A model generated the notes under the pieces. That model was given only the letters and a program-made list of their open reading frames with translations. It had not been told where the DNA came from and did no database searches. Shown here piece after piece: positions 11,668-30,928 of a stretch of 64,000 nucleotides of DNA (position 1 is the first letter of the stretch; each line of letters begins with the position of its first letter). Location of the stretch: the sequence record LR535910.1. One strand, given 5' to 3'. The position numbers were made by a program, and so were the translations under genes.

Positions 11668-11677
11668 GAGGGTATAG

Positions 11678-12520: not shown

Positions 12521-12530
12521 GGATTTTGAC

Positions 12531-13376: not shown

Positions 13377-13397
13377 TCCTGAGTAAAGGAAGTAAGA

Positions 13398-14309
13398 ATG
13401 AAACCTTTAAACAAAACGTCCGATCAGCTGGTTCTGGATTTTATTAATGAGAAAAACCCAGACGCAGAACTGGAACTTTCTAAAATAACGCTCGGCACAC
13501 CGACCCCTATTAGCGATGAAGGTGCCGATCGCAATACCAGCATGACCCTGACTGCGAAAAAGAACTCCGGGTACATCGGTACTCAGGACGTGACTTATAA
13601 TCGCCTGGAAGGCAGTGCGCTGTTCCGTAATGTAACAGCATACCTCGACGTTAAACTGCCGAAAACCACCACAGACCTGCTGACGACCCTGAACACCCAA
13701 TACGGATTGAAGCTGACCGAAGACGATATCGTTCCGGCGGCTATTCCGGAAAATACCAACCCGCCGCTGACTAACCCGAACGATCCGGACCCAGCACCGG
13801 TTGACCATGTCATTACCTTCAAAGAAGACTGCTACGCTTATCTGGGCAGCATCCCGGTTAAAATCGGTGCTAAGCCTCAGGTTGGTGAACGTCTGAGTCT
13901 GGTGGTAACACAAACCAAGCTCGACGGCCTGGTTTACCCAGATGGTCCAAGCGAAGCGAAGGGTCAGGGCTACATCTACTCTTACGGTGTAGACTGCACA
14001 GCAATCGCAGCATTCCTGAAAGTACAGGCGAAAGGTGTTATCGCTGGCGACTCTGCATTCCCGGTTGAGCTGAATAAAGTTGTGCCGGAACTGTGGGTTG
14101 CATCTGATGAGCCTGCGGATTATAACCTGAAAGGTGCTAACGTGTTGTACGTTGGTTCTACTACTGATGATGGCACTGCTTCAGGCGACGATCCTAAGAA
14201 ACCGGTTGAAGGTGCAAACACTGCTTACAACCAGGTTCTGCTGCTGCAGCTGGATGACACTCTGTGCACCAACTTCCAGGGCGTCATGTACCTGCACTTT
14301 AATGCCTAA
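13398..14309 (+). CDS. Virion structural paralogue, class I (probably abundant)
   Basis: DFINEKN...RNTSM...GYIGTQDVTYNRL; ends FQGVMYLHFNA; visibly rich in CTG/CCG/AAC codons; own terminator. Confidence 0.8.
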   Translation: MKPLNKTSDQLVLDFINEKNPDAELELSKITLGTPTPISDEGADRNTSMTLTAKKNSGYIGTQDVTYNRLEGSALFRNVTAYLDVKLPKTTTDLLTTLNTQYGLKLTEDDIVPAAIPENTNPPLTNPNDPDPAPVDHVITFKEDCYAYLGSIPVKIGAKPQVGERLSLVVTQTKLDGLVYPDGPSEAKGQGYIYSYGVDCTAIAAFLKVQAKGVIAGDSAFPVELNKVVPELWVASDEPADYNLKGANVLYVGSTTDDGTASGDDPKKPVEGANTAYNQVLLLQLDDTLCTNFQGVMYLHFNA

Positions 14310-14322
14310 TTAGGCCTCGCTG

Positions 14323-14362
14323 GGAGGAGGAAATCCTCCTCCTGGCTACTCCTTTCTTTTTT
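14323..14362 (+). terminator. Putative terminator
   Basis: GGAGGAGG-AAAT-CCTCCTCC stem, T tract about 10 nt downstream. Confidence 0.6.
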
Positions 14363-14378
14363 GGCCGAGGAGGCTATT

Positions 14379-15218
14379 ATGGCTTTATATAGTCTGTCTC
14401 AGCGACAATATCTGTACGATGCGATTAATGCCGAAAACCCGGATGCTGTTCTACCGATGGGTTTAGACAATGCTATCATCGGTACGCCGAAAGCAATCAC
14501 ACCGACAGCAAGCGGTGCCAATACTGAGATTATCATTCGTGGTCGTCAAGGTCGTGGCTATATCGGTCCTCAGACGTTCCGTTATAAGCGCTTGTCGCTG
14601 AACGACTTATTTAAGAACATGACACCTCAGGTAACTGCACCGAATGCCTACGGTTGGTTGAACGTGGAGTCGAAACGTACTGCGTTTGCGCAGAACCTGA
14701 ACGGTCGTTATGGATTAAACCTGGTTGCAGACGATATCCCAGAACAATACGTTTATCTGAACGTAAACAACACGATGCGTATTAACGCTAGCTGTATCCA
14801 ATACACTGGCAGCATCACCTTTATGTCTATCCGGGGCAAGAATAGTCTCGAAGACCTCGTGGTAAACGACATCTTGTCGGCTTTGAACCACCCTGCAGCA
14901 GCAAGCACTGGTAAGAAATACATGGGCTTCTTGACGTACGGGGAAGACTTTACCGATGAAGTGCAGGTTATGGCCTCGTTTAAGAACGGGCGAATGGACG
15001 TAGGAAGTAACTTTGATTTGGGTTACACGTCCAATCTGATGGCCACATTGGTCGCACGTGGGGTACCGTCGTTTGATCCGACGAACTGCACAATTACCCG
15101 CTACAAAACGAGTGAGTTGGCGACCGCCAATAAAGCGTACGATAACGTATTGCTGATTACCGGCATTCAGAACGACCCGAAAGTAATCGGCGAGTGTATG
15201 TTGCACTACAACAACTAG
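14379..15218 (+). CDS. Virion structural paralogue, class I
   Basis: GAGGAGG RBS before ATG 14379; DAINAEN...ANTEI...GYIGPQTFRYKRL; ends GECMLHYNN. Confidence 0.75.
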   Translation: MALYSLSQRQYLYDAINAENPDAVLPMGLDNAIIGTPKAITPTASGANTEIIIRGRQGRGYIGPQTFRYKRLSLNDLFKNMTPQVTAPNAYGWLNVESKRTAFAQNLNGRYGLNLVADDIPEQYVYLNVNNTMRINASCIQYTGSITFMSIRGKNSLEDLVVNDILSALNHPAAASTGKKYMGFLTYGEDFTDEVQVMASFKNGRMDVGSNFDLGYTSNLMATLVARGVPSFDPTNCTITRYKTSELATANKAYDNVLLITGIQNDPKVIGECMLHYNN

Positions 15219-15228
15219 GAATTAGCGA

Positions 15229-16116
15229 ATGGCTATTTATCAACCTTCTAAAGACGTCCTGTTGGCAGCAGTGAACGCACAGAACTCGCTTGCTGTTAAG
15301 ATGACTGACATCATCTGGTCCTCGCCAAAGGACATCCGTGGTACGGAGAAGGAAACGCTGACTAACCGTAACACGCAAATTAAAATTACGGCAGATGGGG
15401 TAACGGGCTCTACCTGGTCGGGTAAGAAAAATGTCTTCTACAACCGCATGAAAGTCGAAGACTTGTTAGTGTTGATTGGTGACACGTTGGCGATCGGCCC
15501 ATCCAACGAAACCTTGTATGCGGCCATTCCTGGACTGAACCAACGTTACGGTTTTGTTCTGGAAGAAGCTGACCTGCAGGACGCAGATATCGAATGGAAC
15601 GGTGATAAGACCGAAGGAACTGTGCGTGTTGTTGCACATCCTGAGTCTATCGGTTGGGTTGGACAGGCGACATTTAAAGTCGTGAAAGGCGATGAGTCGT
15701 TAGTCTCTGCGGTCACCACTAACGTCCTGACCGGTCTGAAATACCCGAACGGTCAGATGGGTTCCGAAACCGTTACTGCGGTCATTGCAGAGGTTTATTC
15801 CTACCCGTACAACTTCACCAAATACCGTGATGAGTTGCTGGCATACGTGCCGGGTATTCTGTCCGGACAGCCGTTAACGGATATGGTTAACCTGCTGAAA
15901 GATATCACGGGTACTGCATGGGTAGCGACCACCTCCGCTTCCTACGGTTTGGCGGGCGCGGAGGTTATCAGCGTTGGTCTGAATGACCCTGTTGCAATGC
16001 CGACAAACGCGAAGTACAAGTATGCGCTGGTGTTGAAACTGCCTGTTACCTGTACCACCATCGTCGGAACGTTGTATCTCCAGTTCAACGATCTGGACGA
16101 TCCAAGCGAGGTATAA
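15229..16116 (+). CDS. Virion structural paralogue, class I
   Basis: AAVNAQN...RNTQI...FYNRM; VTTNVLTGLKYP linker; ends GTLYLQFND. Confidence 0.75.
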   Translation: MAIYQPSKDVLLAAVNAQNSLAVKMTDIIWSSPKDIRGTEKETLTNRNTQIKITADGVTGSTWSGKKNVFYNRMKVEDLLVLIGDTLAIGPSNETLYAAIPGLNQRYGFVLEEADLQDADIEWNGDKTEGTVRVVAHPESIGWVGQATFKVVKGDESLVSAVTTNVLTGLKYPNGQMGSETVTAVIAEVYSYPYNFTKYRDELLAYVPGILSGQPLTDMVNLLKDITGTAWVATTSASYGLAGAEVISVGLNDPVAMPTNAKYKYALVLKLPVTCTTIVGTLYLQFNDLDDPSEV

Positions 16117-16119
16117 TTG

Positions 16120-16947
16120 ATGATCAACTATGCTAAGCCGTCAAACGAGTTGGTCTTTGACCTCATTAACCGGGATAACCCAAACCTACCTATTAAAGCG
16201 TCGCCGGCAAACTGCTACGTGGAGAAAGTGACGCAGGTTCCCGTTAATGCAGCTTCCAACAACCGCAATACGTCGGCACGCTTGCGCGGTATTCAGGGTT
16301 CCGGATTTCGAGACGCAATCACCGTTTACTACGACCGTGTGAACTTAGCGCGGTTATTGCCGTGGGGTCCTTCTGTCCAGGCGCAGTTCGTCACGTTTGA
16401 CGCGCCCAACCTCCACTCAGCCTTTTCGGTGCTCTTGGATACTTACGGAGTAAACTTCTCCGCAATCGATATCCAAAACTACTCACTGTTTGGTGCCAAT
16501 ACCCCAAATTACACCAATACACAGACCATTGCAGCGCTATCGACATCTCCGGCTTATATCGGTTCTGCGACGTTGCGTTATAACCGTGGTTTACCGGTAC
16601 TAGACACTTCGGTGAAATCAGATGTCTTGAATGCGATTCAAGAGCCTATTTCACCGTCTCTCGGTAAGAAGTGTATTGATTTGTTGACGTACGGTATTGA
16701 CTTTACCGCGTATAAAAACCTACTGACAGTAGATGCTTCTGGCCTACCGCAGTGGGCTGGTTTGCGTAAGGTGTTGGATGACCTGGGTATTCCGAACTAC
16801 GCGGGGCCACTGAACAGTAACACCGTTCAGGATGTGCCGACTTCCACCGCTCAGTTCGCTAACAAATCGTACGACCGCGTGGTTATCCAAACGGGCATCG
16901 ATGAGGAAGGCGTGAAAGGCGTGGCGTACTACCACTATAACAGCTAA
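16120..16947 (+). CDS. Virion structural paralogue, class I
   Basis: DLINRDN...RNTSA...VYYDRV; ends GVKGVAYYHYNS. Confidence 0.75.
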   Translation: MINYAKPSNELVFDLINRDNPNLPIKASPANCYVEKVTQVPVNAASNNRNTSARLRGIQGSGFRDAITVYYDRVNLARLLPWGPSVQAQFVTFDAPNLHSAFSVLLDTYGVNFSAIDIQNYSLFGANTPNYTNTQTIAALSTSPAYIGSATLRYNRGLPVLDTSVKSDVLNAIQEPISPSLGKKCIDLLTYGIDFTAYKNLLTVDASGLPQWAGLRKVLDDLGIPNYAGPLNSNTVQDVPTSTAQFANKSYDRVVIQTGIDEEGVKGVAYYHYNS

Positions 16948-16952: not shown

Positions 16953-16977
16953 GGGGCTCTTCGGAGCCCCATCTTTT
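16953..16977 (+). terminator. Rho-independent terminator
   Basis: GGGGCTC-TTCG-GAGCCCC followed by ATCTTTT. Confidence 0.75.
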
Positions 16978-16994
16978 GGCGATGCGGAGTCCCT

Positions 16995-18407
16995 ATGCTA
17001 TTTTACTCGAAGGAGTCGGCACTGCTTGTATACGACCAAGTCAATCGGGATAATCCTGATTTAGTTGTTAAGCTGACGCCGGCTATCGCTGCTTTAACCA
17101 GCGGCCCAACTTCAGTTACGTTAAACCAGCGTAACACCAAAGCTGTTTTCACCGGGTATCCAGGGACAGGTGTACAAGGTAATGTTACCGTGTACTACGA
17201 CCGGATTAACCTGGCCACTTTATTTAATTTTGTGCCGACTGTGGCTATCAAAGATACAGTCTTAACGGTACGAGACGCGCTACCTGCAATAAACGACGCA
17301 TTGGGGCTTACATTAGTTGCTTCTGATTTGCAGTCACCTGACGCAAGTTTACCTAAACCGAGCGCTTCGCCGCAGACGTTGAAATTAAATATCTCAGGTA
17401 ATTGCCCTGCGTTTACAGGCAGCTTAACGATACGTTATACCGTCCCGAGTGGTGCAATTTACCCCGATTCTGGACCTGGCCCTAAAACGTTGCTGCAAGG
17501 TAACACTATCGCGGGTTATTTCGGAACAACCACAATTGCAGAGTTGTTTACACACTCTCAACTTCTTAATGCCACTATATCGGCCGGTGCGTTACCACCG
17601 GTACATTCTGGTGCCGAAGGTTGGTACAAGTTCTTTTACCAGGGTAGGGTTATTTACCTCCCGATTAGTCCTGTCGCTAGCTCCATCTCCTGGAATACGT
17701 TATATACAAACGGACTCGTTTACGGAACAGACGATAATGGTAAATACCCTGCGGCGACGCCCGTTAACCAGGGACGCATCATTAGCTTTACAGGCGCAGA
17801 CAACAAAAGGTTTTACTTCCGCGTTCGTCTACCTAGTGCCGGGAAAGACCCATACGTCAGCGGCACCCCAACTGCCGCTGAGTTAGCAGGTAGTGAGTTT
17901 GAGATGTTCAACTTTCTGTATAATGGAACGTGGGACAAACCGATTAACAGTTACTGGACGCTGTTCTGTTTATTGAAAGATACACTGAACACCAACGTCG
18001 CCAATCATCGCATGGCGACGTTGTCTGGAGCCAGTTGGACAAACTTAGGAAAATCATCGAGCGCAGGCAACTACTACTGGTTCCCGGTGCTAGAGTTGGT
18101 GGATAAGTCCACAGTTACCTTGGGTTTAGAAGATATCCATGGTGCGGTAGATTACAGTCTCCAACCGTGCAGCGTGTCCGCAGAAAACACGTTTAGTCTC
18201 AAGCCGTTGGTGCTCGGTAATCCAGATACTACCGATTTCGAACCGGTAGTTGTTACTTCAGAAAACAGTTTCGCACTGCATCCGCCTGCTTTAATGCTGC
18301 CGAAGACAGTCGACTTCCAACCCATTGCGGCTACCGCTGAAATGTATACGCCACCCGACAAGACATCGTTAACGTCACTTAACGGTGAACTGGACGGCTT
18401 TAAGTAG
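16995..18407 (+). CDS. Cassette 1 gene A: anchor domain, shared GPGP..GYFG domain, Pro-rich repeats, terminal NGELDGF
   Basis: Motifs VYYDRINL, SGPGPKTLLQG...GYFG, WYKFF, YWFPVLEL, TSLNGELDGFK. Confidence 0.75.
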   Translation: MLFYSKESALLVYDQVNRDNPDLVVKLTPAIAALTSGPTSVTLNQRNTKAVFTGYPGTGVQGNVTVYYDRINLATLFNFVPTVAIKDTVLTVRDALPAINDALGLTLVASDLQSPDASLPKPSASPQTLKLNISGNCPAFTGSLTIRYTVPSGAIYPDSGPGPKTLLQGNTIAGYFGTTTIAELFTHSQLLNATISAGALPPVHSGAEGWYKFFYQGRVIYLPISPVASSISWNTLYTNGLVYGTDDNGKYPAATPVNQGRIISFTGADNKRFYFRVRLPSAGKDPYVSGTPTAAELAGSEFEMFNFLYNGTWDKPINSYWTLFCLLKDTLNTNVANHRMATLSGASWTNLGKSSSAGNYYWFPVLELVDKSTVTLGLEDIHGAVDYSLQPCSVSAENTFSLKPLVLGNPDTTDFEPVVVTSENSFALHPPALMLPKTVDFQPIAATAEMYTPPDKTSLTSLNGELDGFK

Positions 18408-18418
18408 AGGTATCATCC

Positions 18419-19417
18419 ATGTCTTTTACTTTGCGTTGGAAAAATCCAAACGTAATCTCTACGGTAGTAAAAATCTACCGTGACGTTAAAGATATCACAC
18501 CGAGCGCTTTGCCTGAACCGATTGCAACGCTCTCAAATGGCGAGACAGAATGGCGTGATACCACCGCCGCACCAGGCGCAACCTATTATTACCTTCTGAC
18601 GGTAACCGCCAACGGTAAAACAGTGGCATCGTCTAGCCAGAAATACACCATTGAGATAAAGCGTGGGATTGGCCCAATGACTATTCTAAACGGTAACGAC
18701 CGTTTAGGGTTTATGGGTGCGGTTCCTTACGACGAACAATGGCTTCCGTCGCAAATGCCACCTGCATTTTTGGCGATGTTCCCTAATCTATTAACCGATC
18801 GTGTGGCGTTGTATAAATTTACCCGAAACGGGAAAATCTATTACATGCTATCTAACACGTCGCAGTTCCCGAATACGCCTGTGGACTGGGCTTCCCTCTA
18901 TCAAGCTGGTTTAGTCTACGGTACGGGCGATGCTGGCCCAGAGAACGGCCATGGAGCGCTACCGGCCACTCCACAAGACGCTAAGATAGTCCACAAAGGG
19001 GATACGTACATTATGCGTCTTCCTCGCGGCCTGACGATGTCTAGCGAGCCGCCTGCGTATCCTTTCGTAGCTGACTATAATGGGAAAACCCATGATGAAA
19101 TCGCTTCTCTAACCAACCCGTGTGAGTATAACGATTTGCTTTACACGATGGTTAACGAGGTGCCGTGGAAACAGCGTTGGGCTAACTGGGCAACGAACAG
19201 TTATACTTTTCTGGGGCAGGGTACTTTGGGAACCTCGGCAACGTATTTCGGCGGTGGTGTTCTCTGTATGGAACACGACACCACGGAAGACCGTGTGCTC
19301 CATCGTGGTATTTTTAACAATGCCGGTGGAACACCCGTATCCGCGATTCAGCGTATAAACTATTTATCACCCACCACGAAAGGGCGTTACTACCCTATCT
19401 TTGAACTGGTTGAGTAA
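18419..19417 (+). CDS. Cassette 1 gene B: FnIII-like N-terminal domain plus shared domain
   Basis: MSFTLRWKN...VKIYRD...ATLSNGETEWRD...YYY; paralogous to 21873 and 25229. Confidence 0.75.
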   Translation: MSFTLRWKNPNVISTVVKIYRDVKDITPSALPEPIATLSNGETEWRDTTAAPGATYYYLLTVTANGKTVASSSQKYTIEIKRGIGPMTILNGNDRLGFMGAVPYDEQWLPSQMPPAFLAMFPNLLTDRVALYKFTRNGKIYYMLSNTSQFPNTPVDWASLYQAGLVYGTGDAGPENGHGALPATPQDAKIVHKGDTYIMRLPRGLTMSSEPPAYPFVADYNGKTHDEIASLTNPCEYNDLLYTMVNEVPWKQRWANWATNSYTFLGQGTLGTSATYFGGGVLCMEHDTTEDRVLHRGIFNNAGGTPVSAIQRINYLSPTTKGRYYPIFELVE

Positions 19418-19426
19418 GGGGCAGTC

Positions 19427-20350
19427 ATGACTATACGGTTAAGCTGGCCATCTCAAGCCAGCAAAGGTCTTACCGCGATTGAAATCTATCGCAAGGAAGG
19501 CTGGAACGCAACAATCGACGTTTACAACCCAGGTACACCACACGCGACCTTATCAGGCAGTGCGGTAGAGTTCGTAGACGACATTGATACCCTGACGAAG
19601 AATACGACCTATCGTTATTGGGTGGCTGCTGTAAAAGACAACGAGCGTCTTATTGGCAGCCCGATTACGCAAGGGTTCTATCCAGACACCGGACCGGGTC
19701 CACAAACTATTTTGCGAGGCGATTGGGCTTCGGGTTATTTCGGTACAGTACCGAATACCGAGTTCTTTAATACCGCTGAGCTGAAGCTTATGTTGACCGC
19801 GCAACAGGGTAACATGCTGACCAACGATCCCCAGGAATGGCACAAGTTTATTTTCCATGGGCGAATAGTGTTCTTCCCAGCGACTATGCATTCGAGAAGT
19901 AACTCGGTACAAATGGCGTATCAGTACGGCATGATGTACGGTACCGACGATGACGGGAGCGTAGTCCCGCAGGGCGCGACAGCGACTAAACAAGACTGTA
20001 AGGTTACAAAAGACGGCCGCACGTACCGAATCCGTTTACCCTACGCAGTCCCGTACGACGCGGCTCTCTCGGGACAAGATTACAACAACGGCGAATGGCG
20101 GAACACGATGGGTCGTTTATACCCAATCAGCTCGCAATTCCCACCTATCGGTCTTGGTGCTATTGACTCGCTTACGATACAAGGTTCAACCTCCCAGCCG
20201 AGCGAAACGGGTGCCGCTGCGTTGGCACCGCTGTGGAGCAACAACATATTTGCTTATGCGTACGGTTATGCGCCGGCGGGAATTACTAACACTTCGGGTG
20301 TCGGGATCGCAGCCACGATGTTCTTTGCTTTTGAATTAGTCTTACCGTAA
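19427..20350 (+). CDS. Cassette 1 gene C: FnIII-like N-terminal domain plus shared domain
   Basis: IEIYRK...YRYWVAAVKD...DTGPGPQTILRGDWASGYFG; paralogous to 22865 and 26231. Confidence 0.75.
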   Translation: MTIRLSWPSQASKGLTAIEIYRKEGWNATIDVYNPGTPHATLSGSAVEFVDDIDTLTKNTTYRYWVAAVKDNERLIGSPITQGFYPDTGPGPQTILRGDWASGYFGTVPNTEFFNTAELKLMLTAQQGNMLTNDPQEWHKFIFHGRIVFFPATMHSRSNSVQMAYQYGMMYGTDDDGSVVPQGATATKQDCKVTKDGRTYRIRLPYAVPYDAALSGQDYNNGEWRNTMGRLYPISSQFPPIGLGAIDSLTIQGSTSQPSETGAAALAPLWSNNIFAYAYGYAPAGITNTSGVGIAATMFFAFELVLP

Positions 20351-20363
20351 CGGAGTAAAAGCC

Positions 20364-21860
20364 ATGGGGTTGTATACAGAACCTTCAATGGAACTGCTCT
20401 GCCAACAAATTGTGCGTGACAATCCCAGTTTAGCAGGAAAAATCACCGCCGACTCCATTGGGGTCAGGGGTGTTCCTGTTGCGAAAAACGTTAACGGACG
20501 AAACACACAGATTACGTTGGTAGGTAAACCCGGTAAAGGATTTGCTGGGGAAATAACGGTCTATTACGACCGGTTGAATCTGGCCAGTCTATTTAAGTCT
20601 GGCCCGAAGATGGCGAGTATTCCACGTAGCGCACAAACCCATGCGGAAGCGTTACCGGCGTTCAATGAATTGAACGGGTTGAACTTAACCGCGAGTGATA
20701 TCACCAGTCCAAACGTTGCATTAATGAAATACGCTACGCCGGAAACTGTAACTCTGACGGCGCACGCTAACTCCTTGTGTTATACCGGGTCATGCAAGAT
20801 GACCTATGTTTACGAACCGATTGCGATGTATCCGAAGTCGGGTCCTGGGCCAAAAGGATTAATGGCTGGTAATGAGTTATACGGATTCTTTGGGCTGGTA
20901 AGCGCGGAAGAGTTATTCACATCTGATGAAATGGTGTATGCCCTCTATAACGGCACCACCTGGCCTAACCGCTACGCTATCAAGTGGCTCAAATTCTTTC
21001 TGAATGGGGCGGTAGTGTTTGTTCCGACCCGTGCGATTTGCAACGTTACCTGGGCAGACCTGTACAACAAGGGTGCAATATTTGATTCCGGAGACGCAGG
21101 ACCTCGCCCGAAGTCGACTTACACACCTGTCGATGTTGAACAGTTGAAATACATGGTAAAACGGGATGATGAAGGAACGCATTATTTCAGAATGTCTATC
21201 CCGTATTACACCGAGAACGCCGCCGCGCCTGATTGGAGTAAACCGCCGTCAATCACCTCTATCCTGTCACTGACCAGCAAATTGGGGTCGGTGAACGTAT
21301 ATGGGGAGTGGGGAACTCTTAGCACGACTGATGCTAACTTCCTGGATTACGTGTGGTTACGACACCAGTTCGGTGCCGACCAAGCGTATTACCAGTCTAT
21401 CAGTGCGAGCTATCGTTCAAACACCTACATCTACACCTCTTCTGGCTTTTGGCCAATCCTGGAGATGTTTGATGTTGCCAATGAACCTGTGCCGTTGATT
21501 GACGAAGGTGCAGAATTAACATGGGCACCGTCCGTGGTTACTCTGACGGACATCGACCAAAATGAATCGCTTCGTGTGGTGCCTATTACGGAAACCTCCG
21601 CCGCAGCGAATCCACGTCCGTTAGTTTTCAACACCGACAACACCGAATCTGCCACCCCTGCCTGGCTGCGGGAAGCGTCATCAGACTCACCACGTCCTCT
21701 GCTTGCCGCGACGGACAATGATGAACGTGCATATTCCGTCGCGGTAACAGGCATGGCTAGCGTTAAGATTAGACCGATTATTCTCACGACTGACCAAATC
21801 GCCCAACCTTCAAAAATTACTCTGGGCGATACTAACGGTGAGTTGGATGGATTCCAATAA
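20364..21860 (+). CDS. Cassette 2 gene A
   Basis: MGLYTEPSMELLCQQIVRDNP; SGPGPKGLMAG...GFFG; ends DTNGELDGFQ. Confidence 0.75.
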   Translation: MGLYTEPSMELLCQQIVRDNPSLAGKITADSIGVRGVPVAKNVNGRNTQITLVGKPGKGFAGEITVYYDRLNLASLFKSGPKMASIPRSAQTHAEALPAFNELNGLNLTASDITSPNVALMKYATPETVTLTAHANSLCYTGSCKMTYVYEPIAMYPKSGPGPKGLMAGNELYGFFGLVSAEELFTSDEMVYALYNGTTWPNRYAIKWLKFFLNGAVVFVPTRAICNVTWADLYNKGAIFDSGDAGPRPKSTYTPVDVEQLKYMVKRDDEGTHYFRMSIPYYTENAAAPDWSKPPSITSILSLTSKLGSVNVYGEWGTLSTTDANFLDYVWLRHQFGADQAYYQSISASYRSNTYIYTSSGFWPILEMFDVANEPVPLIDEGAELTWAPSVVTLTDIDQNESLRVVPITETSAAANPRPLVFNTDNTESATPAWLREASSDSPRPLLAATDNDERAYSVAVTGMASVKIRPIILTTDQIAQPSKITLGDTNGELDGFQ

Positions 21861-21872
21861 GAGGTAACGACA

Positions 21873-22862
21873 ATGGCTTTTACAATTCGTTGGACGAACA
21901 ATAACCCTGGGGCTTCGACCGTGAAGCTGTACCGCGACACCAAACCTCTGGTGCGTACGGCATTACCTGAACCTCTGGCAACGTTCACTAACGGGGAAAC
22001 TGAGTATACTGACCGAACAGCGATACTGGGGACAACGTATTACTACATGACCACCGTGACAGTGGGAAGTCGGACACTGTTCAGTCCGCAGAAATCAATT
22101 CTAATTCAGAACCGTCGCGGTATCGGCATCGTGGCTCCACAGTACGGTGATGACCGCTTTGCGTATTACGGGTACGTGGCGTACGGTGAATTACCTAGCG
22201 CGGGTGATTATCCGCCAGGGTTTGTGGCCCTTTCTGGATACGACCCAACTGTTAAGCCGGGCTTGATGAAGTTCCAGCTAGACGGTAAAATTCTGTATCT
22301 GTTTAGTGGTCTTCGTGTGAACGGCAACACGCTGTATAGCCGTGATGCGATTTATAACGCGGGTTTGCTGTACGGTGTGGCGGGACCTGGTCCGGAAGGC
22401 GGTCATGGCGATTTACCTGACGTTGACCAGGCTGGGGAGTTTACGTGGTTGGGTGACCGCTATCGGATGCGCCTGCTGCGCGGTTTAACACTCGACAGTG
22501 AAAGCCCGGTCATGACACTCGATGCACAGTGGGACGGTAAACTCCATGACGCGTCACCGTATACTGCCGATAGCGAATACAACCGACTCATCTATGGGAT
22601 AAGTAGCTGGTTCCCAGAAAAGAAAAAAGTGATGTCCCTGATAAAGTGGTCGAACTCCAGCATATTCGGAAATGGATCGCTGGTGGCAGGCCGTGGGGCG
22701 CATTGTCAGGAGTTTGACCCAGAACGTAAGTTGGGGCTGACGCGCGGATGGGCGGCGGCGGATTCCACTGATACCGTGGATAACCTCCAGCGTATACAAC
22801 ATGTCCCTGGTGCGACCGTGGGCGGTATTTGGATTCCAGTAATCGAGCTTATCGAGGATTAA
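21873..22862 (+). CDS. Cassette 2 gene B
   Basis: MAFTIRWTN...KLYRD...NGETEYTD; YRMRLLRGLT; ends IPVIELIED. Confidence 0.75.
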   Translation: MAFTIRWTNNNPGASTVKLYRDTKPLVRTALPEPLATFTNGETEYTDRTAILGTTYYYMTTVTVGSRTLFSPQKSILIQNRRGIGIVAPQYGDDRFAYYGYVAYGELPSAGDYPPGFVALSGYDPTVKPGLMKFQLDGKILYLFSGLRVNGNTLYSRDAIYNAGLLYGVAGPGPEGGHGDLPDVDQAGEFTWLGDRYRMRLLRGLTLDSESPVMTLDAQWDGKLHDASPYTADSEYNRLIYGISSWFPEKKKVMSLIKWSNSSIFGNGSLVAGRGAHCQEFDPERKLGLTRGWAAADSTDTVDNLQRIQHVPGATVGGIWIPVIELIED

Positions 22863-22864
22863 TC

Positions 22865-23764
22865 ATGCCTATTACATTACACTTTGCACAACGGAAGCCA
22901 CAGGCGCTCGATAGCATCGAAATCTATCGCAAGACGCCGGGCAACGCCACCATTGATGTTAATGCACCGGGAACGCCTCTGGCAACCCTTCCGGGTGACG
23001 CTACATCGTACGAAGACAACGCTGTGGAAAACAACACCACTTACCGTTATTGGATAGCTGCGGTTAAAGACGGTGAGCGTGTCTTCAACACCCCTACCGC
23101 CCAAGGGTTCTTTTTAGACACCGGGCCTGGCCCCCAGAAACTGTTATACGGCGACTGGCACGCTGGATACTTTGGAACAGTAACGCCAGCAGAGTTATTC
23201 ACTAACACGGAACTGAACGGCCTCGTGGTGAATATGTTCAGTTCCGCCGTTGGTGCCTGGCATAAATTCATTTACAAAAACCGTATTCTGTTTATGTCCG
23301 ATAACTCGATAATAAACGCTAGCCCGCAGTTCATTTATAACCAGGGGATGATGTACGGCCAGGATGGCAATGGATATGTACCGGGCTGGGCTACTGCACG
23401 TAACCAACGGCGCACGGTGACGAAAAACGGTTACGAATACGTGGTGCGCTTGCCGTATTTGTTCGACTACAAATTCTGGACGTCTTACGTTGGAAGCGGT
23501 AACACTGAGTTGTATCTCGACGGTGAGTGGTTTAACACCTTCGCGCGCCTGTACAACTACAGTGGGCAGTTTCCGCGCTTTGACGACATTCCGGTCGGTC
23601 CAATCGATTCGGTTACTGCCCAACAATCTGCATTCTTTGCGGCTATGAATAACACGTCCAGTCAGTGGTACAACCTTCCACCTTACCCTGAGTCGCCGTC
23701 GTGGAGTAACTACGGTACCACTACAATACGCTCCATTGCGGTACTTGAACTCGTTCTGCCTTAA
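22865..23764 (+). CDS. Cassette 2 gene C (start reassigned to ATG 22865)
   Basis: GAGGA RBS; IEIYRK...YRYWIAAVKD...DTGPGPQKLLYGDWHAGYFG; ends VLELVLP. Confidence 0.75.
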   Translation: MPITLHFAQRKPQALDSIEIYRKTPGNATIDVNAPGTPLATLPGDATSYEDNAVENNTTYRYWIAAVKDGERVFNTPTAQGFFLDTGPGPQKLLYGDWHAGYFGTVTPAELFTNTELNGLVVNMFSSAVGAWHKFIYKNRILFMSDNSIINASPQFIYNQGMMYGQDGNGYVPGWATARNQRRTVTKNGYEYVVRLPYLFDYKFWTSYVGSGNTELYLDGEWFNTFARLYNYSGQFPRFDDIPVGPIDSVTAQQSAFFAAMNNTSSQWYNLPPYPESPSWSNYGTTTIRSIAVLELVLP

Positions 23765-23775
23765 CAGGAGACTTC

Positions 23776-25218
23776 ATGGGATTGTATAGCGCACCCGAAC
23801 TGGAATTACTCTGCCAACAAGTCGTAAGGGATAACCCTGAACTCGCAGGAAGAATCAGCGCTGATTCGATTGGGGTGAGGGGTATTCCTGCCGAGACCAC
23901 TAAGAATGGTCGTAACACGGTAATTACGTTGGTAGGAAAACCCGGTAAAGGTTTCTCTGGGGAGTGCACGGTTTATTACGACCGTTTAACATTATCAGAT
24001 CTATTTAAAATAGCTCCGCGCGTCTACGTACCACAAACGGCCAAGACCGTGCGGGATCTTCTCCCAGCTCTACGCGATTTATACGGTGTTTGGTTATCTG
24101 ATAGCAGTGTACAGTCGGTAGACGCGCCTATCAAATCGCTGGCAACGCCAACACGTATTAATTTAACCGCGTATAATAGCGTATGCTATCGCGGCTATAT
24201 CCCGGTCGATTATTTGAATGAAGCCGTGGGCTACTATCCAGATTCTGGGCCAGGCAATAAATATTTGTTGGCAGGGGACAGCACAAACGGATACTTCGGC
24301 CACGTTTCTCAGCAAGAGTTATTTACCTTTGCTGAACTAAACAACCTAATTCGTCCTGATGTTGCCCCAACGAAAATGACTTTCGAGTGGTTGAAATTTT
24401 TCAAGGACGGTAAGATTGTTTATCTACCGACTACCGGAACGTTAACAGCAACCTGGACGGCCCTTTATCAAGCGGGTGCCATTTTCGGTACAGGAGGCGC
24501 TGGTCCGTATCCAGACGGTATCGAACCTGTTGACCAGGCTTTGATTGTCACGAAAACTGAGAATAACAAGACGCATTATTACCGTGTCTCCGTTCCGGTT
24601 AGCCCTGATTTATCAAAGGCCACGCCGTTGTGGCTTATTTCACAACTCGGTGACGGTTCTACGGGTGGCGACTGGGCAAATGACACCACGTTAACCAGAA
24701 CCACCGTCTTCTTCACGCAACAACTGTTAACCGGGGGTAACCCTGTTAAAGTACAACGTTGCAATATGCGTGGTGGCTCAGTTGAATGGGTAACCCTTAC
24801 AGATACCACTTACTGGTGGCCTGTTTTAGAGGAAATCAATAAGGACGACATCGTCTTACCTTTAGCTGATGTGGAAGGGGATGTTGTGTGGCGCGTTAGG
24901 GTTATTCCTAATGTACCATCACCACAACCTGATAGCATTCGCCCTCTTGCAGTCGAGGTTGCGACAACAGATGCGCCGAGACCTCTAGCAACAACTGCGG
25001 AACAGGTGGAAGAACCTATCAGCCCGATTGTGGTGGGTGAACCAAACGTCGATACTGCGCTGCCGTTATCGACAGTGTCGAACAGCGTAGGTACAGTTAG
25101 GCCGATGGTTGTACTTGAACCACACGTCGACGCACCGCGTCCACTACCGCCTACTCAGGCAGAACCTCCACTTAAAACAGATTTAGCAACCGCGAACGGT
25201 GAGTTGAACGGCTTCTAA
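23776..25218 (+). CDS. Cassette 3 gene A
   Basis: MGLYSAPELELLCQQVVRDNP; SGPGNKYLLAG...GYFG; ends TANGELNGF. Confidence 0.75.
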   Translation: MGLYSAPELELLCQQVVRDNPELAGRISADSIGVRGIPAETTKNGRNTVITLVGKPGKGFSGECTVYYDRLTLSDLFKIAPRVYVPQTAKTVRDLLPALRDLYGVWLSDSSVQSVDAPIKSLATPTRINLTAYNSVCYRGYIPVDYLNEAVGYYPDSGPGNKYLLAGDSTNGYFGHVSQQELFTFAELNNLIRPDVAPTKMTFEWLKFFKDGKIVYLPTTGTLTATWTALYQAGAIFGTGGAGPYPDGIEPVDQALIVTKTENNKTHYYRVSVPVSPDLSKATPLWLISQLGDGSTGGDWANDTTLTRTTVFFTQQLLTGGNPVKVQRCNMRGGSVEWVTLTDTTYWWPVLEEINKDDIVLPLADVEGDVVWRVRVIPNVPSPQPDSIRPLAVEVATTDAPRPLATTAEQVEEPISPIVVGEPNVDTALPLSTVSNSVGTVRPMVVLEPHVDAPRPLPPTQAEPPLKTDLATANGELNGF

Positions 25219-25228
25219 GGAGTAACAG

Positions 25229-26227
25229 ATGGCTTTCACACTACGCTGGAAAAATGAAAATCCGGCAGGTTCAATTGTTAACATTTATCGGGGCACGGCT
25301 AAAATAAATACAGCCGCATTACCAGCCCCTATTGCAACTTTAAGTAATGGCGAAACGGAATGGACGGACGAAACCGTTATTCTTAACACCCGTTACTGGT
25401 ATCTTTTAACAGTAACTGTTAACGGTCGTACCGTAGGTAGTCCACAAAAATCCATTGTCATTAAAAACCGTCGTGGTGTGGGTGGCGTCGACCAGATTAA
25501 CTATTCCGATACTGACGACTTGGCGTTTCTGGGGCAGTTGCCGTTCGAAGAACAGATGACCTATGACGCGTTGCCTGCAGGCTTTCGTGCATTAACAGGG
25601 ATGTCGGGCACGGGCACGCTAATCATGAACAAGTTTTATCGTCATGGTAAAGTTTACTACATGATGAACAGCGGCGGACGATTTAACTCTACACTTTACT
25701 CGTGGAATGACATTTATAACGCGGGGCTTGTGTACGGTGTTGATGGATTTGGTCCTGATAACGGACGTGGTGATTTGGCTGGTGTTGACCAGAGTGGGTT
25801 GTTTGAATGGCAAGGCGACACCTATCGGATGCGATTGCTGCGCGGTTTAACCGACGGGGACGAACCGACAGTAATGACGTTGGATGAATCGTTGCGAAAC
25901 GCAGACCATGATGACTTGGAATATGGTCGCTGCGAATATAACGATTTTGTTTATCCGTTCGGAGATTGTATCCCTAACAAACAAATGCTCCCTAACTGGA
26001 CTAATATCAGTCCAGCGTCCATTTATGGGAGCGGTAGCGCTTACCAAGGCAAAGGTTTCTTGTGCCAAGAACGTGATCCTGAATCGGGATTAGTTCTGGT
26101 TCGTGGGTCTGCGCCTACCGATTCAAGTATAACCAATACGTCGAAACGTAACCTCTCCCAAGTTACGTTAATTGACAGTGCTGAGAAGGTCGGTTTGTAC
26201 GCATTCGTTATCGAGTTAGTGGAGTAA
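25229..26227 (+). CDS. Cassette 3 gene B
   Basis: MAFTLRWKN...NIYRG...NGETEWTD; YRMRLLRGLT; ends FVIELVE. Confidence 0.75.
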   Translation: MAFTLRWKNENPAGSIVNIYRGTAKINTAALPAPIATLSNGETEWTDETVILNTRYWYLLTVTVNGRTVGSPQKSIVIKNRRGVGGVDQINYSDTDDLAFLGQLPFEEQMTYDALPAGFRALTGMSGTGTLIMNKFYRHGKVYYMMNSGGRFNSTLYSWNDIYNAGLVYGVDGFGPDNGRGDLAGVDQSGLFEWQGDTYRMRLLRGLTDGDEPTVMTLDESLRNADHDDLEYGRCEYNDFVYPFGDCIPNKQMLPNWTNISPASIYGSGSAYQGKGFLCQERDPESGLVLVRGSAPTDSSITNTSKRNLSQVTLIDSAEKVGLYAFVIELVE

Positions 26228-26230
26228 AAC

Positions 26231-27133
26231 ATGTCGATTATCTTAAACTGGAAACAACAGCCAGGCCAGACTTTAGATTCCATTGAAATCTATCGTTACG
26301 ACAACCCTAGACAAAGTGTTAACCCAGTAGCACCGGGGGAACCTATTGTAACACTACCAGGTAACACAACGACGTACGAGGACAAGACCACCGAAGCGTA
26401 TAAAACGTATCAATATCGCATCGTGGCGGTAAAGGGCACTGAAAAGGTTATGGGGCTGCCGATTGTACAGGGCGACTTTCCAATGACAGGACCCGGCCCA
26501 CAGGAACTTATTCGTGGCGACTGGCATCGTGGCTACTTTGGCACACTGACAAACGAAGAATTTATTCTTAACCATGCCGAGCTGAATGGTTTAATTGGCT
26601 TTAATGCCTGGAACCAAGCTCCAACATTGTTCCATAAATTCGTTTTCAAAGGACGCATTCTGTTCATTCCTGACACGGTGACCCGTTTAGGGACGACGTG
26701 GAACGAACAATACCAGCAAGGTCTGGCCTGGGGAACAGATGACTACGGTTTCCCGCCACGGAGCGTCTCTACCACTAACCAGCGTCGGACATTTAATAAA
26801 GACGGTTACGAGTATGTGGTACGTTTGCCTCGACTCGGAGACTACAGTTATGGGCACAGCACCTACCTAAGCAGCGGTGGTTATTTTCAAGACGGCGAGT
26901 GGCACAACACGTTCGCAAGCTTGTTCCGCTACGCGGGCGTCGTAAGACGTTTTGGCGACTTACCGACGCGCTCCGGCGGTAGTCCAACCGATTCAAGCGC
27001 AACATTGTTTGCCAACGGTTATGACAACGCCACCCCCTGGTACTATCGCAGCAACTCACCAGACTCACCATCGTACACCTCTTCGACCAATAGCGCGTCG
27101 GTAGTCCACGTTATCGAACTGGTTCTTAGCTAA
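26231..27133 (+). CDS. Cassette 3 gene C
   Basis: IEIYRY...YQYRIVAVKG...TGPGPQELIRGDWHRGYFG; ends VIELVLS. Confidence 0.75.
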   Translation: MSIILNWKQQPGQTLDSIEIYRYDNPRQSVNPVAPGEPIVTLPGNTTTYEDKTTEAYKTYQYRIVAVKGTEKVMGLPIVQGDFPMTGPGPQELIRGDWHRGYFGTLTNEEFILNHAELNGLIGFNAWNQAPTLFHKFVFKGRILFIPDTVTRLGTTWNEQYQQGLAWGTDDYGFPPRSVSTTNQRRTFNKDGYEYVVRLPRLGDYSYGHSTYLSSGGYFQDGEWHNTFASLFRYAGVVRRFGDLPTRSGGSPTDSSATLFANGYDNATPWYYRSNSPDSPSYTSSTNSASVVHVIELVLS

Positions 27134-27144: not shown

Positions 27145-27267
27145 ATGGGGTTTTACTCATCCACTGCACTTGAGCTGTTGTGTCGGCTCATTCAGCGGGA
27201 TAATCCCCAACACGCAGGTCGAATCAGCTGGAGTTAAAGGGATAGCGTACTTCACCATAACAGCTAA
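27145..27267 (+). pseudogene. Internally deleted relic of an anchor-family gene
   Basis: AGGAG RBS; MGFYSSTALELLCRLIQRDNPQHAGRIS matches the starts of the 20364 and 23776 genes; in shifted frames GVKGIAYF and HNS-stop match the end of 16120-16947 (GVKGVAYYHYNS-stop). Confidence 0.75.
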
Positions 27268-27300
27268 AAATAGGCCCCGAAGGGCCTATTTTCTTTTTTT
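27267..27300 (+). terminator. Rho-independent terminator
   Basis: AAAATAGGCCC-CGAA-GGGCCTATTTT followed by CTTTTTTT. Confidence 0.85.
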
Positions 27301-27311
27301 AGGACGTTGCA

Positions 27312-28631
27312 ATGATCAACTATAACAAACCTGTCATGCAGCTGGTTTGGGATCAGATTAATCGTGATAACCCGCAGCTCAAGAAACCACTCAACGCAAC
27401 CAACGTGGCGTTATTACAAGGTCCTTTAACCAATGCCTTGCGCGATGGCCGCAACAGCCGTATAGTGGTAAACGGATTACAGGGTGGTGGTTACAGCGGT
27501 AAGATGGACATCTACTACGACCGCTTAAACCTTTCGCAGTATTTTAAAGGCGTCAGCGTACCGGTTAAAGTACCTTATCGGGCGACGTCCTACCGCGACA
27601 TCATCGACCGGATTTCCGCAGCTTGTGGGTTGGTGCTTACTGCTGACGATTTAACGTATCCCGACAGCCAGTTTGCAATGATCACTGTGGCAACGGGCGA
27701 TCGGACGGTGGCGATTAAATCGGATAACCCCGCATTCACGGGTCACATTCCTATTAGCTTTATTCGTGAAGAGCCCAGCTTTGCCGACTTGTACCACACC
27801 ACCGAAACCGGAGCTTGGGAACCCATGGATGTTTACAGCACGGTCTATCGACTCGACTGGAGCATGTACACCCAACAGATAATCAATATCCCGATGGGTA
27901 CCCCGCTGCGACTAAACAGTAACTCGTACATGACCCAGTTCATCGCGGCGCTGTCGGCATGGTCGGGCATCCCGTTCACTATCGGTAATGCTGCTACTGA
28001 TAACCCGTATGACCTCTATGGGTATGTCGCTACACGCAATAACAACCCAGGCTTAGACCCTGATATGCGTGGGGAGTACAATTACTGCGTGAAGTTGACG
28101 CCACCTGAGGATATGGGTAATCTCCGTCGTCCGTTCTTCTTGCACTTTGGTCCGAAAAATAACGTGGCCTATTTGGCGCAGGAAAAGGACGTCGAACGTT
28201 ATGCGCGTTACATGAGGTTCCGGGAAACCAGCTCAAATTCGATGAGCGTCACGTTGTATCAAAACGAGTACGTGTTGACTCGGGCGGAAGCGCCTGAAAC
28301 AATGGATGATTTAACGGGTTCCCCGTATGGCACTCGATACTGTACCGGGAGTATTCGACGGCTGATGCAACACGCGTTTCCGACCGAAGAGATGTTCCAA
28401 GAAAGTATTGCTAACCGGCGTCGGGTACTGTACCACACTGCTTACACCACCACGTCATCGGCTATTACTTACCAGGGACTATACCGTAACGGATACCAAT
28501 CCAAACAAATGACGAGCCTCTACTCGAATTACTGTAACTATTTCATCTATTACGACCCAAGCAAAGGCGGCTATATGGTCTACAGTCCATATAGCAAAAC
28601 CGCCCCGGTCCCTTGGTATCCACCGCTATAG
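27312..28631 (+). CDS. Virion structural protein: anchor domain plus unrelated Tyr-rich C-terminal region
   Basis: DQINRDNP...RNSRI...GYSGKMDIYYDRLNL N-terminus; unique C-terminal half. Confidence 0.7.
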   Translation: MINYNKPVMQLVWDQINRDNPQLKKPLNATNVALLQGPLTNALRDGRNSRIVVNGLQGGGYSGKMDIYYDRLNLSQYFKGVSVPVKVPYRATSYRDIIDRISAACGLVLTADDLTYPDSQFAMITVATGDRTVAIKSDNPAFTGHIPISFIREEPSFADLYHTTETGAWEPMDVYSTVYRLDWSMYTQQIINIPMGTPLRLNSNSYMTQFIAALSAWSGIPFTIGNAATDNPYDLYGYVATRNNNPGLDPDMRGEYNYCVKLTPPEDMGNLRRPFFLHFGPKNNVAYLAQEKDVERYARYMRFRETSSNSMSVTLYQNEYVLTRAEAPETMDDLTGSPYGTRYCTGSIRRLMQHAFPTEEMFQESIANRRRVLYHTAYTTTSSAITYQGLYRNGYQSKQMTSLYSNYCNYFIYYDPSKGGYMVYSPYSKTAPVPWYPPL

Positions 28632-30901: not shown

Positions 30902-30928
30902 ATGACCCTATCAACTCAGGAGGTTATC

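What the first reader, a model, noticed from the sequence alone, without database searches (positions are those of the whole stretch)
16995..27133. Three-gene cassette (A-B-C) tandemly triplicated and diversified
Seen: the order anchor-protein A, FnIII-like B, FnIII-like C repeats exactly three times over 10 kb. N-terminal parts stay alignable while distal parts diverge strongly. All nine proteins share one GPGP/GxG..G(Y/F)(F/L/M)G...W.KF...LY..GL.YG domain. Inference: three alternative heterotrimeric appendage heads, a gene-accordion route to receptor breadth.
Basis: partly seen in the sequence, partly recalled or inferred. Interest (0 to 1): 0.7.

Follow-up and report, generated by a model that had tools for sequence, protein, structure and literature searches.

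The report
Triplicated three-gene fibre-module cassette, jumbo phage
A Salmonella jumbo phage (SPN3US type) really does carry three diverged copies of a three-gene set, which most likely encode interchangeable binding modules that plug into this phage family's newly described "DUF7941" filaments; the genes were already known as virion proteins, but their cassette structure and swapping had not been described.

Summary
Window 16995-27133 holds nine tightly packed + strand genes in the order A-B-C three times. It is 100% identical to Salmonella phages SPFM13/17/2 and equals SPN3US gp145-gp153.

- **Architecture.** A has the N-terminal half of DUF7941, a ~220-aa core and a disordered tail. B and C have an Fn3 domain plus the same core.
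- **Cassettes as units.** Trees of A, B and C from eight phages are congruent. At least five old cassette types occur, 1-3 per genome.
- **Expansion and contraction within the genus.** I found a loss, a cassette 2/3 hybrid, a replacement, and a remnant of a fourth A gene.
- **Interpretation, partly supported.** "Anchor", "FnIII-like" and "shared domain" hold. The heterotrimer and the link to receptor breadth are untested. Published mass spectrometry finds all nine proteins together in one virion, and in tailless heads, so they are not alternatives and not simply tail parts.
- **Prior knowledge.** The genes belong to SPN3US "paralog family B" (2016-17). DUF7941 was proposed in 2026 (Goslar preprint, phiKZ gp127 structure) to build head-to-tail filaments from the baseplate.
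- **Best reading.** A docks B/C-bearing binding heads onto those filaments.
- **Open conflict.** SPN3US proteomics says head; the phiKZ structure says baseplate.

This is a new variant of a known kind, of moderate interest.

The parts
16995..18407 (+). A1 (= SPN3US gp145), 470 aa. DUF7941 N-terminal domain aa 1-150, shared core aa ~148-372, disordered Pro-rich tail aa ~378-470 ending in the conserved K-x-x-L-x-x-x-N-G-E-L-D-G-F motif.
18419..19417 (+). B1 (= gp146), 332 aa. Fn3 domain (aa ~1-80) plus shared core, ending in ELVE.
19427..20350 (+). C1 (= gp147), 307 aa. Fn3 plus shared core, ending in ELVLP. AlphaFold2 model pLDDT 94. This allele is 84% nt identical to SPN3US while its neighbours are ~98%.
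20364..21860 (+). A2 (= gp148), 498 aa, same architecture as A1.
21873..22862 (+). B2 (= gp149), 329 aa.
22865..23764 (+). C2 (= gp150), 299 aa from the ATG. The mechanical ORF from TTG 22829 overlaps B2, and the SPN3US annotation does not use it.
23776..25218 (+). A3 (= gp151), 480 aa.
25229..26227 (+). B3 (= gp152), 332 aa.
26231..27133 (+). C3 (= gp153), 300 aa.
27146..27238 (+). Short remnant of the 5' end of a fourth A-type gene (resembles the A2/A3 N-terminus). One truncated gene fragment.
16953..16980 (+). Terminator-like GC hairpin plus T-run just upstream of A1. Left boundary of the nine-gene block.
27267..27302 (+). Strong terminator-like hairpin (11 pairs) plus T-run after the A remnant. 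Right boundary of the block.
10870..16947 (+). Seven tandem full-length DUF7941 paralogues (= gp138-gp144, 265-303 aa). They share the N-terminal domain with A1-A3 and are the likely filament subunits.
27312..28631 (+). gp154, 439 aa. DUF7941 plus a C-terminal domain shared with gp155.
28646..30823 (+). gp155, 725 aa. DUF7941 N-terminal domain plus a Pfam GP38 tail-fibre adhesin domain.
33715..34242 (+). gp160, 175 aa, a high-abundance virion protein. Short DUF7941-type N-terminal domain plus the same C-terminal NGELDGF motif as A1-A3.

Best explanation
The nine genes form one late operon that encodes three diverged sets of an adaptor (A) and two Fn3-bearing partners (B, C). All nine proteins are built around the same ~220-aa core domain. 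They are accessory modules of the chimallivirus DUF7941 filament system. A uses its DUF7941 N-terminal domain, and probably its conserved C-terminal peptide, to join the head-to-tail DUF7941 chains made by the neighbouring paralogues (gp138-144, gp160). The cores of A, B and C associate, so each set displays Fn3 and variable core surfaces outward as a ligand-binding, probably glycan-binding, head. All three sets are present on the same particle, which would make the filament cloud multivalent. Over evolutionary time whole cassettes are duplicated, lost by recombination between paralogues, and replaced. Shown here or in the literature: gene order, homology, domain architecture, co-inheritance of A, B and C, copy-number changes, presence of all nine proteins in virions, no cleavage by the prohead protease, and filament formation by a DUF7941 protein of phage Goslar. 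Inferred: that A joins the filaments, that B and C bind A, that the function is adhesion, and where the filaments are anchored.
For: - **Family membership of A.** A residues 1-150 match PF25613 DUF7941. The A1 model's only significant PDB fold match is the phiKZ gp127 N-terminal domain in the outer baseplate periphery (9xqd_0, E 3.7e-5). A profile of the window's DUF7941 paralogues hits PHIKZ127 at E 5.8e-22.
- **Filament model.** The Goslar preprint (10.64898/2026.04.21.720040) reports that DUF7941 proteins are chimallivirus-specific and form head-to-tail oligomers. Purified gp22 forms filaments, and some members carry carbohydrate-binding, glycoside-hydrolase or LRR domains.
- **A receptor-binding relative next door.** gp155 joins a DUF7941 N-terminal domain to a GP38 adhesin domain (E 4.8e-18).
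- **A's tail motif.** The C-terminal motif is conserved across all cassette types and genera and is shared with the abundant short protein gp160.
- **B and C.** They have Fn3 domains.
- **The core domain.** It has 1,822 cluster representatives. It often occurs 2-8 times in one chain, fused to ConA-like lectin, Kelch or DUF285 modules. One protein has three cores in a chain, and one has DUF7941 plus two cores.
- **Co-inheritance.** A, B and C trees are congruent.
- **Operon layout.** Terminator-like hairpins bracket the block and the genes are 2-13 nt apart.
- **Virion presence.** All nine proteins are in purified virions and are not cleaved by the prohead protease (PMC10052503 Tables S2 and S6).
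Against: - SPN3US proteomics finds gp138-155 and gp160 in tailless heads at 0.9-1.7 times the wild-type level. That does not fit filaments anchored only at the baseplate, as proposed from phiKZ gp127.
- No A-B-C contact has been shown, and no multimer prediction could be run here.
- A profile of the A tail motif does not detect the linker of the full-length DUF7941 paralogues, so the idea that the tail is a docking peptide rests on analogy with gp160 and Goslar gp23.
- The core has no fold match in the PDB and no Pfam or NCBIfam match, so a binding function is inferred only from its partner domains.
- Spectral counts within cassettes 2 and 3 differ up to about 2.6-fold.
Confidence: 0.55

Rival explanations
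1. Capsid-anchored decoration or head fibres. [quoted passage not shown]
For: All nine proteins co-purify with tailless heads from two different mutants (PMC5105663, PMC10052503). They have Fn3 domains like other exposed phage decoration proteins. The SPN3US capsid has an unassigned protrusion on each hexamer (PMC7552025).
Against: Crude copy estimates from spectral counts are tens per particle, not 260 (my arithmetic). The phiKZ capsid structure paper mentions no DUF7941 member (gp126, gp127 or gp143) among its capsid proteins. A carries the same N-terminal domain that forms filaments in Goslar and sits on the baseplate in phiKZ.
Confidence: 0.17
2. One reading: three alternative heterotrimeric receptor-binding heads on tail or baseplate appendages.
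For: phiKZ gp127 (DUF7941) is modelled in the outer baseplate periphery, and the Goslar authors propose baseplate anchoring. Noxifer has core-type genes next to its tail sheath and fibre genes. One family-B member, gp237, was reassigned to the tail.
Against: gp145-153 are not depleted in tailless heads, while true tail and baseplate proteins (gp168-170, gp239, gp255) fall to a few percent or less of their wild-type level, or to zero. All three sets are present together, so they are not alternatives. There is no trimeric fibre fold or known receptor-binding fold in A, B or C.
Confidence: 0.15
3. Internal head or ejection proteins, as tentatively suggested for family B members in 2017.
For: Head fraction by mass spectrometry. 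gp141 and gp160 were marked 'Head ejection?' in PMC5694885. The SPN3US head holds much unassigned internal protein, including pentameric 'antler' complexes under the vertices.
Against: No PF12699 domain. No prohead-protease cleavage or cleavage motif. Fn3 domains and a GP38 adhesin in the same family. A relative is exposed on the phiKZ baseplate, and Goslar gp22 makes long filaments.
Confidence: 0.08
4. Enzymes ('glycosyl hydrolase', as B and C are labelled in Proteus phage 7 and MET_P1_082_240).
For: The annotation in two GenBank records. Erwinia relatives have an EPS depolymerase gene just upstream of the array.
Against: No hydrolase family in Pfam, NCBIfam, PHROGs or the PDB, by sequence or by fold. 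The invariant core residues are mostly glycines and aromatics.
Confidence: 0.05

Closest known systems
SPN3US 'paralog family B' (gp83, gp138-154, gp160, gp237; Thomas et al. 2016, Ali et al. 2017, Scheuch et al. 2023)
   Same: These are the same genes: the window region is 97% nt identical to SPN3US gp145-153. The proteins are known virion proteins, assigned to the head, and not cleaved by the prohead protease.
   Different: The papers treat the family as one flat set of about 20 paralogues of unknown function. They do not describe the A-B-C cassette order, the two architectures (DUF7941 plus core versus Fn3 plus core), the co-phylogeny, or cassette gain, loss and swapping.
Goslar DUF7941 'fibre cloud' proteins (gp22, gp23; gp86, gp92, gp161) and phiKZ gp126/gp127
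   Same: A1-A3 share the DUF7941 N-terminal domain. Some Goslar members likewise put host-recognition-type domains after that domain. gp160 resembles Goslar gp23 in layout (N-terminal domain plus linker, high copy number).
   Different: A lacks the DUF7941 C-terminal domain. It carries the core domain and a terminal peptide instead. B and C have no DUF7941 at all. In SPN3US the family is found with tailless heads, whereas the Goslar and phiKZ work places it at the baseplate periphery. The preprint does not mention SPN3US.
Branched multi-receptor-binding-protein systems with conserved N-terminal adaptor domains and variable distal parts (e.g. CBA120 tailspikes TSP1-4, phage G7C gp63.1/gp66, Klebsiella phage phiK64-1). 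From my own knowledge, not tested here.
   Same: The logic is the same: a conserved docking end, a divergent distal end, several specificities on one particle, and modular exchange between relatives.
   Different: Those are homotrimeric tailspikes or fibres on the baseplate with known enzymatic or beta-helix folds. Here the units are three different proteins with a new core fold and an unresolved attachment site.
T4 Hoc and other Ig/Fn3-like phage surface decorations. From my own knowledge.
   Same: An Fn3/Ig-type domain exposed on a virion, dispensable in some relatives, and a plausible weak glycan adhesin.
   Different: Hoc is a single protein bound at hexamer centres. B and C have a large extra core domain and come in co-inherited A-B-C sets.

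Membership tests
DUF7941 (Pfam PF25613) / SPN3US paralog family B | Pfam match above the gathering score | tested here: met
   A1, A2 and A3 score 79-111 bits against a cut-off of 27, but the match covers only profile positions 1-153 of 276. B and C have no match, so they belong to family B only through the core they share with A.
DUF7941 (Pfam PF25613) / SPN3US paralog family B | N-terminal globular domain with the fold of phiKZ gp127 residues 1-150 | tested here: met
   The A1 model hits 9xqd_0 with Foldseek E 3.7e-5, probability 1.0, TM-score (target) 0.58. Profile A5 hits PHIKZ127 at E 5.8e-22.
DUF7941 (Pfam PF25613) / SPN3US paralog family B | Disordered linker followed by the DUF7941 C-terminal globular domain | tested here: not met
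   A has the unrelated core instead (hhalign of the core against the DUF7941 profile gives 0.2% probability). It has a disordered tail (pLDDT below 50 for residues 378-470). Its layout is closer to the short NTD-plus-linker class (gp160, Goslar gp23).
DUF7941 (Pfam PF25613) / SPN3US paralog family B | Head-to-tail oligomerisation into filaments | not testable with these tools
   No multimer prediction was available. This is known only for Goslar gp22 (negative-stain EM) and from AlphaFold 3 models in the preprint.
Fibronectin type III domain | Seven-strand beta-sandwich of about 90 aa that matches solved Fn3 domains | tested here: met
   C1 model residues ~1-85 match tencon, human Fn3 domains and the Fn3 domain of pectate lyase PelI (probability 1.0, rmsd 2.7-4.5 A). 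The B/C profile hits the PelI Fn3 region at E 0.001.
Phage tail fibre / receptor-binding proteins of known type | Tail location, plus a recognisable fibre, tailspike or adhesin fold | tested here: not met
   A, B and C have no Pfam, PDB or fold match to fibre or spike families. Published proteomics puts them in tailless heads. Only the neighbour gp155 has a GP38 adhesin domain.
phiKZ-type internal head / ejection proteins (PF12699, protease-processed) | PF12699 domain and an N-terminal propeptide removed by the prohead protease | tested here: not met
   No PF12699 match. Table S6 of PMC10052503 lists gp145-153 as unlikely to be cleaved by gp245.
Glycoside hydrolases (GenBank label of B and C in two records) | Match to a glycoside-hydrolase family or fold | tested here: not met
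   No match in Pfam, NCBIfam, PHROGs, PDB sequences or PDB folds.

The most novel reading that the evidence does not exclude
The A-B-C sets are interchangeable hetero-oligomeric ligand-binding heads that plug into a DUF7941 filament cloud. In SPN3US-type phages this cloud would be anchored on the head or neck rather than, or as well as, on the baseplate. That would be a capsid-borne, multi-specificity, modular adhesion system whose specificity repertoire changes by swapping whole cassettes.
Probability: 0.25. Interest if true: 0.8.

Novelty: new variant of a known kind. Interest (0 to 1): 0.55.

Why it matters
Chimalliviruses (phiKZ-like jumbo phages) are leading models for phage cell biology and candidates for therapy, yet how they first find their hosts is unclear.

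The DUF7941 filament idea is months old and rests on one phage. This locus adds four things:

- a second, much larger DUF7941 array with existing quantitative proteomics;
- a new class of partner proteins (Fn3 plus core) that lack DUF7941;
- evidence that adaptor and partners are inherited and exchanged as three-gene units;
- a concrete contradiction, head by SPN3US proteomics versus baseplate by phiKZ cryo-EM, that existing samples could resolve.

The core domain is also a large uncharacterised family, with more than 1,800 clusters at 50% identity.

Tried and rejected
- **PDB by sequence.** Single-sequence searches with A1, B1 and C1 gave nothing useful. The A-family profile gave nothing.
- **PDB by fold.** Fold search of C1 found only the Fn3 domain; the core has no solved relative.
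- **Other libraries.** NCBIfam gave nothing. Rfam and tandem-repeat scans of the region gave nothing.
- **Promoters.** Sigma-70 promoter-like sites are at chance level, 20 found against 20.4 expected. These phages are known to carry their own RNA polymerases, so this scan is not informative.
- **A tail versus DUF7941 linker.** I tested whether the A C-terminal motif is the same element as the linker of full-length DUF7941 proteins. A motif HMM finds only A1-A3 (gp160 was one of the sequences used to build it), so this is not supported by sequence; power is low for 15 residues.
- **Core versus DUF7941 C-terminal domain.** I tested whether the core is a diverged DUF7941 C-terminal domain and rejected it (hhalign probability 0.2%).
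- **Goslar comparison.** gp160 has no detectable Goslar counterpart by tblastn, so the gp160 = gp23 analogy rests on architecture only.
- **Multi-core metagenomic proteins.** Their genomic context was uninformative because the contigs are short.
- **Selection.** Pairwise dN/dS against SPN3US shows purifying selection in most genes (0.06-0.34). The one value above 1 (C3) rests on very few changes, so I make no claim of positive selection.


Full report
**Identity of the window.** The region 16995-27133 is 100% identical to Salmonella phages SPFM13, SPFM17 and SPFM2. It is 97% identical to SPN3US, a Seoulvirus and phiKZ-like jumbo phage. The nine ORFs are SPN3US gp145-gp153, most of which are annotated there as putative virion structural proteins.

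**Check of the observation.**
- The + strand carries nine ORFs in the order 470/332/307, 498/329/299 and 480/332/300 aa, separated by only 2-13 nt.
- All-against-all BLASTP shows three A proteins (29-38% identity over the full length), three B (38-47%) and three C (36-46%), with E-values from 3e-50 to 7e-97.
- A 93-nt remnant of the 5' end of a fourth A-type gene follows C3 in register, and then a strong hairpin terminator.
- Another terminator-like hairpin lies just upstream of A1. The block therefore looks like one transcription unit.
- No RNA family and no simple tandem repeat is present.

**Architecture of A.**
- Residues 1-150 match the first half of Pfam DUF7941.
- The same domain opens the seven ~280-aa paralogues upstream (10870-16947, gp138-144) and also gp154 and gp155 downstream.
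- Residues ~148-372 are a core domain.
- The last ~100 residues are Pro-rich and are predicted to be disordered (pLDDT below 50).
- The tail ends in a motif, K-x-x-L-x-x-x-(N/D/S)-G-E-L-x-G-F. It is conserved in 18 of the 19 A proteins I compared from eight phages, and in the abundant 175-aa protein gp160.

**Architecture of B and C.**
- They begin with an Fn3 domain. Foldseek gives probability 1.0 to solved Fn3 domains, including that of pectate lyase PelI, and the HMM search gives E 0.001.
- They continue with the same core as A (hhalign 99.9% probability, E 2.6e-37).
- They stop at the ELV motif, which in A marks the end of the core.
- Identity falls from the N-terminal domain to the distal parts in all three families.

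**The core domain.**
- It has no Pfam, NCBIfam or PDB relative, by sequence or by fold.
- It is not related to the DUF7941 C-terminal domain.
- In BFVD its fold recurs in 'virion structural proteins' of many phiKZ-like phages: 201phi2-1, PhiPA3, EL, Phabio, Noxifer, PS119XW, RSL2 and PhiEaH1.
- A profile search of 1.84 billion representatives finds 1,822 clusters at E up to 0.001.
- Many of those proteins hold 2-8 cores in one chain. Some are fused to ConA-like lectin (Laminin_G_3), Kelch propeller or DUF285 modules.
- One protein has three cores in a chain. Another has a DUF7941 N-terminal domain followed by two cores.
- This pattern suggests a repeatable scaffold or binding module of adhesive appendages. 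It gives 'Rosetta-stone' type support, but no proof, that the cores of A, B and C sit together.

**Are the cassettes units?** I took the A, B and C proteins of the window and of seven relatives: Lh1B, phiEaH2, CR5, pSal-SNUABM-04, Phobos, Wellington and Caitlin. I built neighbour-joining trees with 200 bootstraps. The three trees agree.
- **Type I** is the first cassette of every phage except CR5 (bootstrap 99/91/92 for A/B/C).
- **Types II and III.** Type II is window cassette 2 plus Lh1B cassette 2. Type III is window cassette 3 plus Phobos cassette 2 (100 for B and C). Types II and III group together (98/100/66).
- **Types IV and V.** Type IV is the single CR5 cassette plus cassette 2 of Caitlin, phiEaH2 and pSal-SNUABM-04 (84 for B, 98 for C). 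Type V is cassette 3 of Caitlin, phiEaH2 and Phobos (100 in all three trees). Types IV and V group at 100 in all three trees.
- **Orphan.** Wellington cassette 2 stands alone.
- **Age.** Orthologues in Erwinia phages are 45-70% identical to A1, more than A1 is to A2 or A3. The multiplication therefore predates these genera.
- **Copy number** is 1 (CR5), 2 (Lh1B, EC001, SPLA3, pSal-SNUABM-04, Wellington) or 3 (SPN3US/SPFM, phiEaH2, Phobos, Caitlin).

**Change within the genus Seoulvirus.**
- Lh1B lacks cassette 3. The deletion ends lie at the start of A3 and in the A-type remnant after C3.
- SPLA5c has a second cassette made of A2, a B2/B3 hybrid and C3. The hybrid B is annotated in two pieces, which is one break.
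- JN03 has replaced cassette 3, gp154 and gp155 with a type V cassette that is 55-64% identical to those of Erwinia phages.
- C1 of the window is only 84% nt identical to SPN3US (dS 0.88, dN/dS 0.06). Its neighbours are about 98% identical, so this single gene was replaced by another allele.
- The 'accordion' is therefore real, but it plays on an old repertoire.

**What is known.**
- Thomas et al. 2016 and Ali et al. 2017 defined SPN3US 'paralog family B' (gp83, gp138-154, gp160/161, gp237). Its function was unknown. It was assigned to the head because all members were found in tailless particles.
- Scheuch et al. 2023 repeated this with a clean tail-tube mutant. gp145-155 have normalised head/wild-type PSM ratios of 0.89-1.67. 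Genuine tail proteins fall to a few percent or less of their wild-type level, or to zero. None of the family is cleaved by the prohead protease.
- My crude scaling of their spectral counts to the 1,615-copy capsid protein suggests tens to roughly a hundred copies of each A, B and C per particle. The same scaling gives about a thousand copies of gp141. This is an estimate only.
- In 2026 the phiKZ structural atlas modelled gp127, a DUF7941 protein, at the end of a gp139 band in the outer baseplate periphery (PMC13250141).
- A preprint on phage Goslar described DUF7941 as a chimallivirus-specific module that oligomerises head to tail. It showed filaments of purified gp22. It noted members with carbohydrate-binding, hydrolase or LRR domains. 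It proposed a micron-scale 'fibre cloud' radiating from the baseplate.
- That preprint does not mention SPN3US.
- My fold and profile searches independently connect the window's family to phiKZ gp127.

**Most likely mechanism.** A is an adaptor that joins DUF7941 chains through its N-terminal domain and probably its terminal peptide. gp160 shares that peptide and has the layout of Goslar gp23. B and C bind A through the paralogous cores and present Fn3 and variable core surfaces. The three sets coexist on the particle. The neighbour gp155, which joins a DUF7941 N-terminal domain to a GP38 adhesin domain, shows that this family does carry receptor-binding modules. The steps from 'A joins the filaments' onward are inference.

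**The main unexplained point.** SPN3US proteomics says head, while phiKZ cryo-EM says baseplate. Either the filaments are anchored at the head or neck in SPN3US-type phages, or they have several anchors (gp237, a family-B member, is a tail protein), or they travel with heads for another reason.

- Right: the observation, the anchor, the Fn3 domains and the shared domain.
- Untested: the heterotrimer.
- Wrong: 'alternative', because all nine proteins are co-present in one virion.
- Contradicted by published proteomics: a tail location.
- Unshown: a link to receptor breadth. Two-cassette phages infect both E. coli and Salmonella.

They were made before I recognised what they would reveal.
- One search printed BLAST ranges of the two annotated pieces of the split B gene of SPLA5c.
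- One search printed an alignment across the Lh1B deletion junction.

I have not used or repeated those positions in the notes or in this report.

Noticed in passing
window 28646-30823: gp155 joins a DUF7941 N-terminal domain to a Pfam GP38 tail-fibre adhesin domain (E 4.8e-18; weak PDB hits to gp38 receptor-recognition proteins). Even so, published mass spectrometry finds it in tailless heads. Its C-terminal ~110 aa are shared with gp154.
   Followed up: partly
window 27146-27238: A short remnant of the 5' end of a fourth A-type gene lies between C3 and a strong terminator. It appears to be one endpoint of the cassette-3 deletion seen in phage Lh1B.
   Followed up: yes
window 19427-20350: C1 is 84% nt identical to SPN3US and Lh1B (dS ~0.88, dN/dS ~0.06), while the flanking genes B1 and A2 are ~98% identical. 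This is a single-gene allelic replacement inside a cassette.
   Followed up: partly
window 33715-34242: gp160, a high-abundance virion protein of 175 aa, ends in the same NGELDGF motif as A1-A3 and has a short DUF7941-type N-terminal domain. By architecture it is the likely counterpart of Goslar gp23.
   Followed up: partly
window 10870-16947: Seven tandem full-length DUF7941 genes (gp138-144). In Erwinia relatives and pSal-SNUABM-04, an EPS depolymerase gene sits directly upstream of this array. The window has none there.
   Followed up: partly
window 41006-54141 (- strand): Three giant ORFs of 1742, 1376 and 1237 aa. By size and position they fit SPN3US gp168-170, 'paralog family C', the phiKZ gp131-like baseplate and fibre proteins.
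   Followed up: no
window 30866-31519: An endolysin-type protein (Glyco_hydro_108 plus PG_binding_3) lies directly after the DUF7941 cluster. A DUF1353 protein is at 31808-32449; its counterpart is labelled tail assembly chaperone in SPLA5c.
   Followed up: no
GenBank records LR535911, LR535904 and other SPFM phages: Several SPFM genome records match the region only in about 40 short pieces at ~99% identity, and their protein calls are fragmented. They look like error-rich assemblies rather than real variants.
   Followed up: no
L012 (Noxifer) 5031-8822; L011 (PhiPA3) 3775-7689: More distant chimalliviruses have tandem runs of three or four Fn3-plus-core or core-type genes without a DUF7941 adaptor. 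In Noxifer the run lies just downstream of the tail sheath and fibre genes. One PhiPA3 copy is unannotated.
   Followed up: partly
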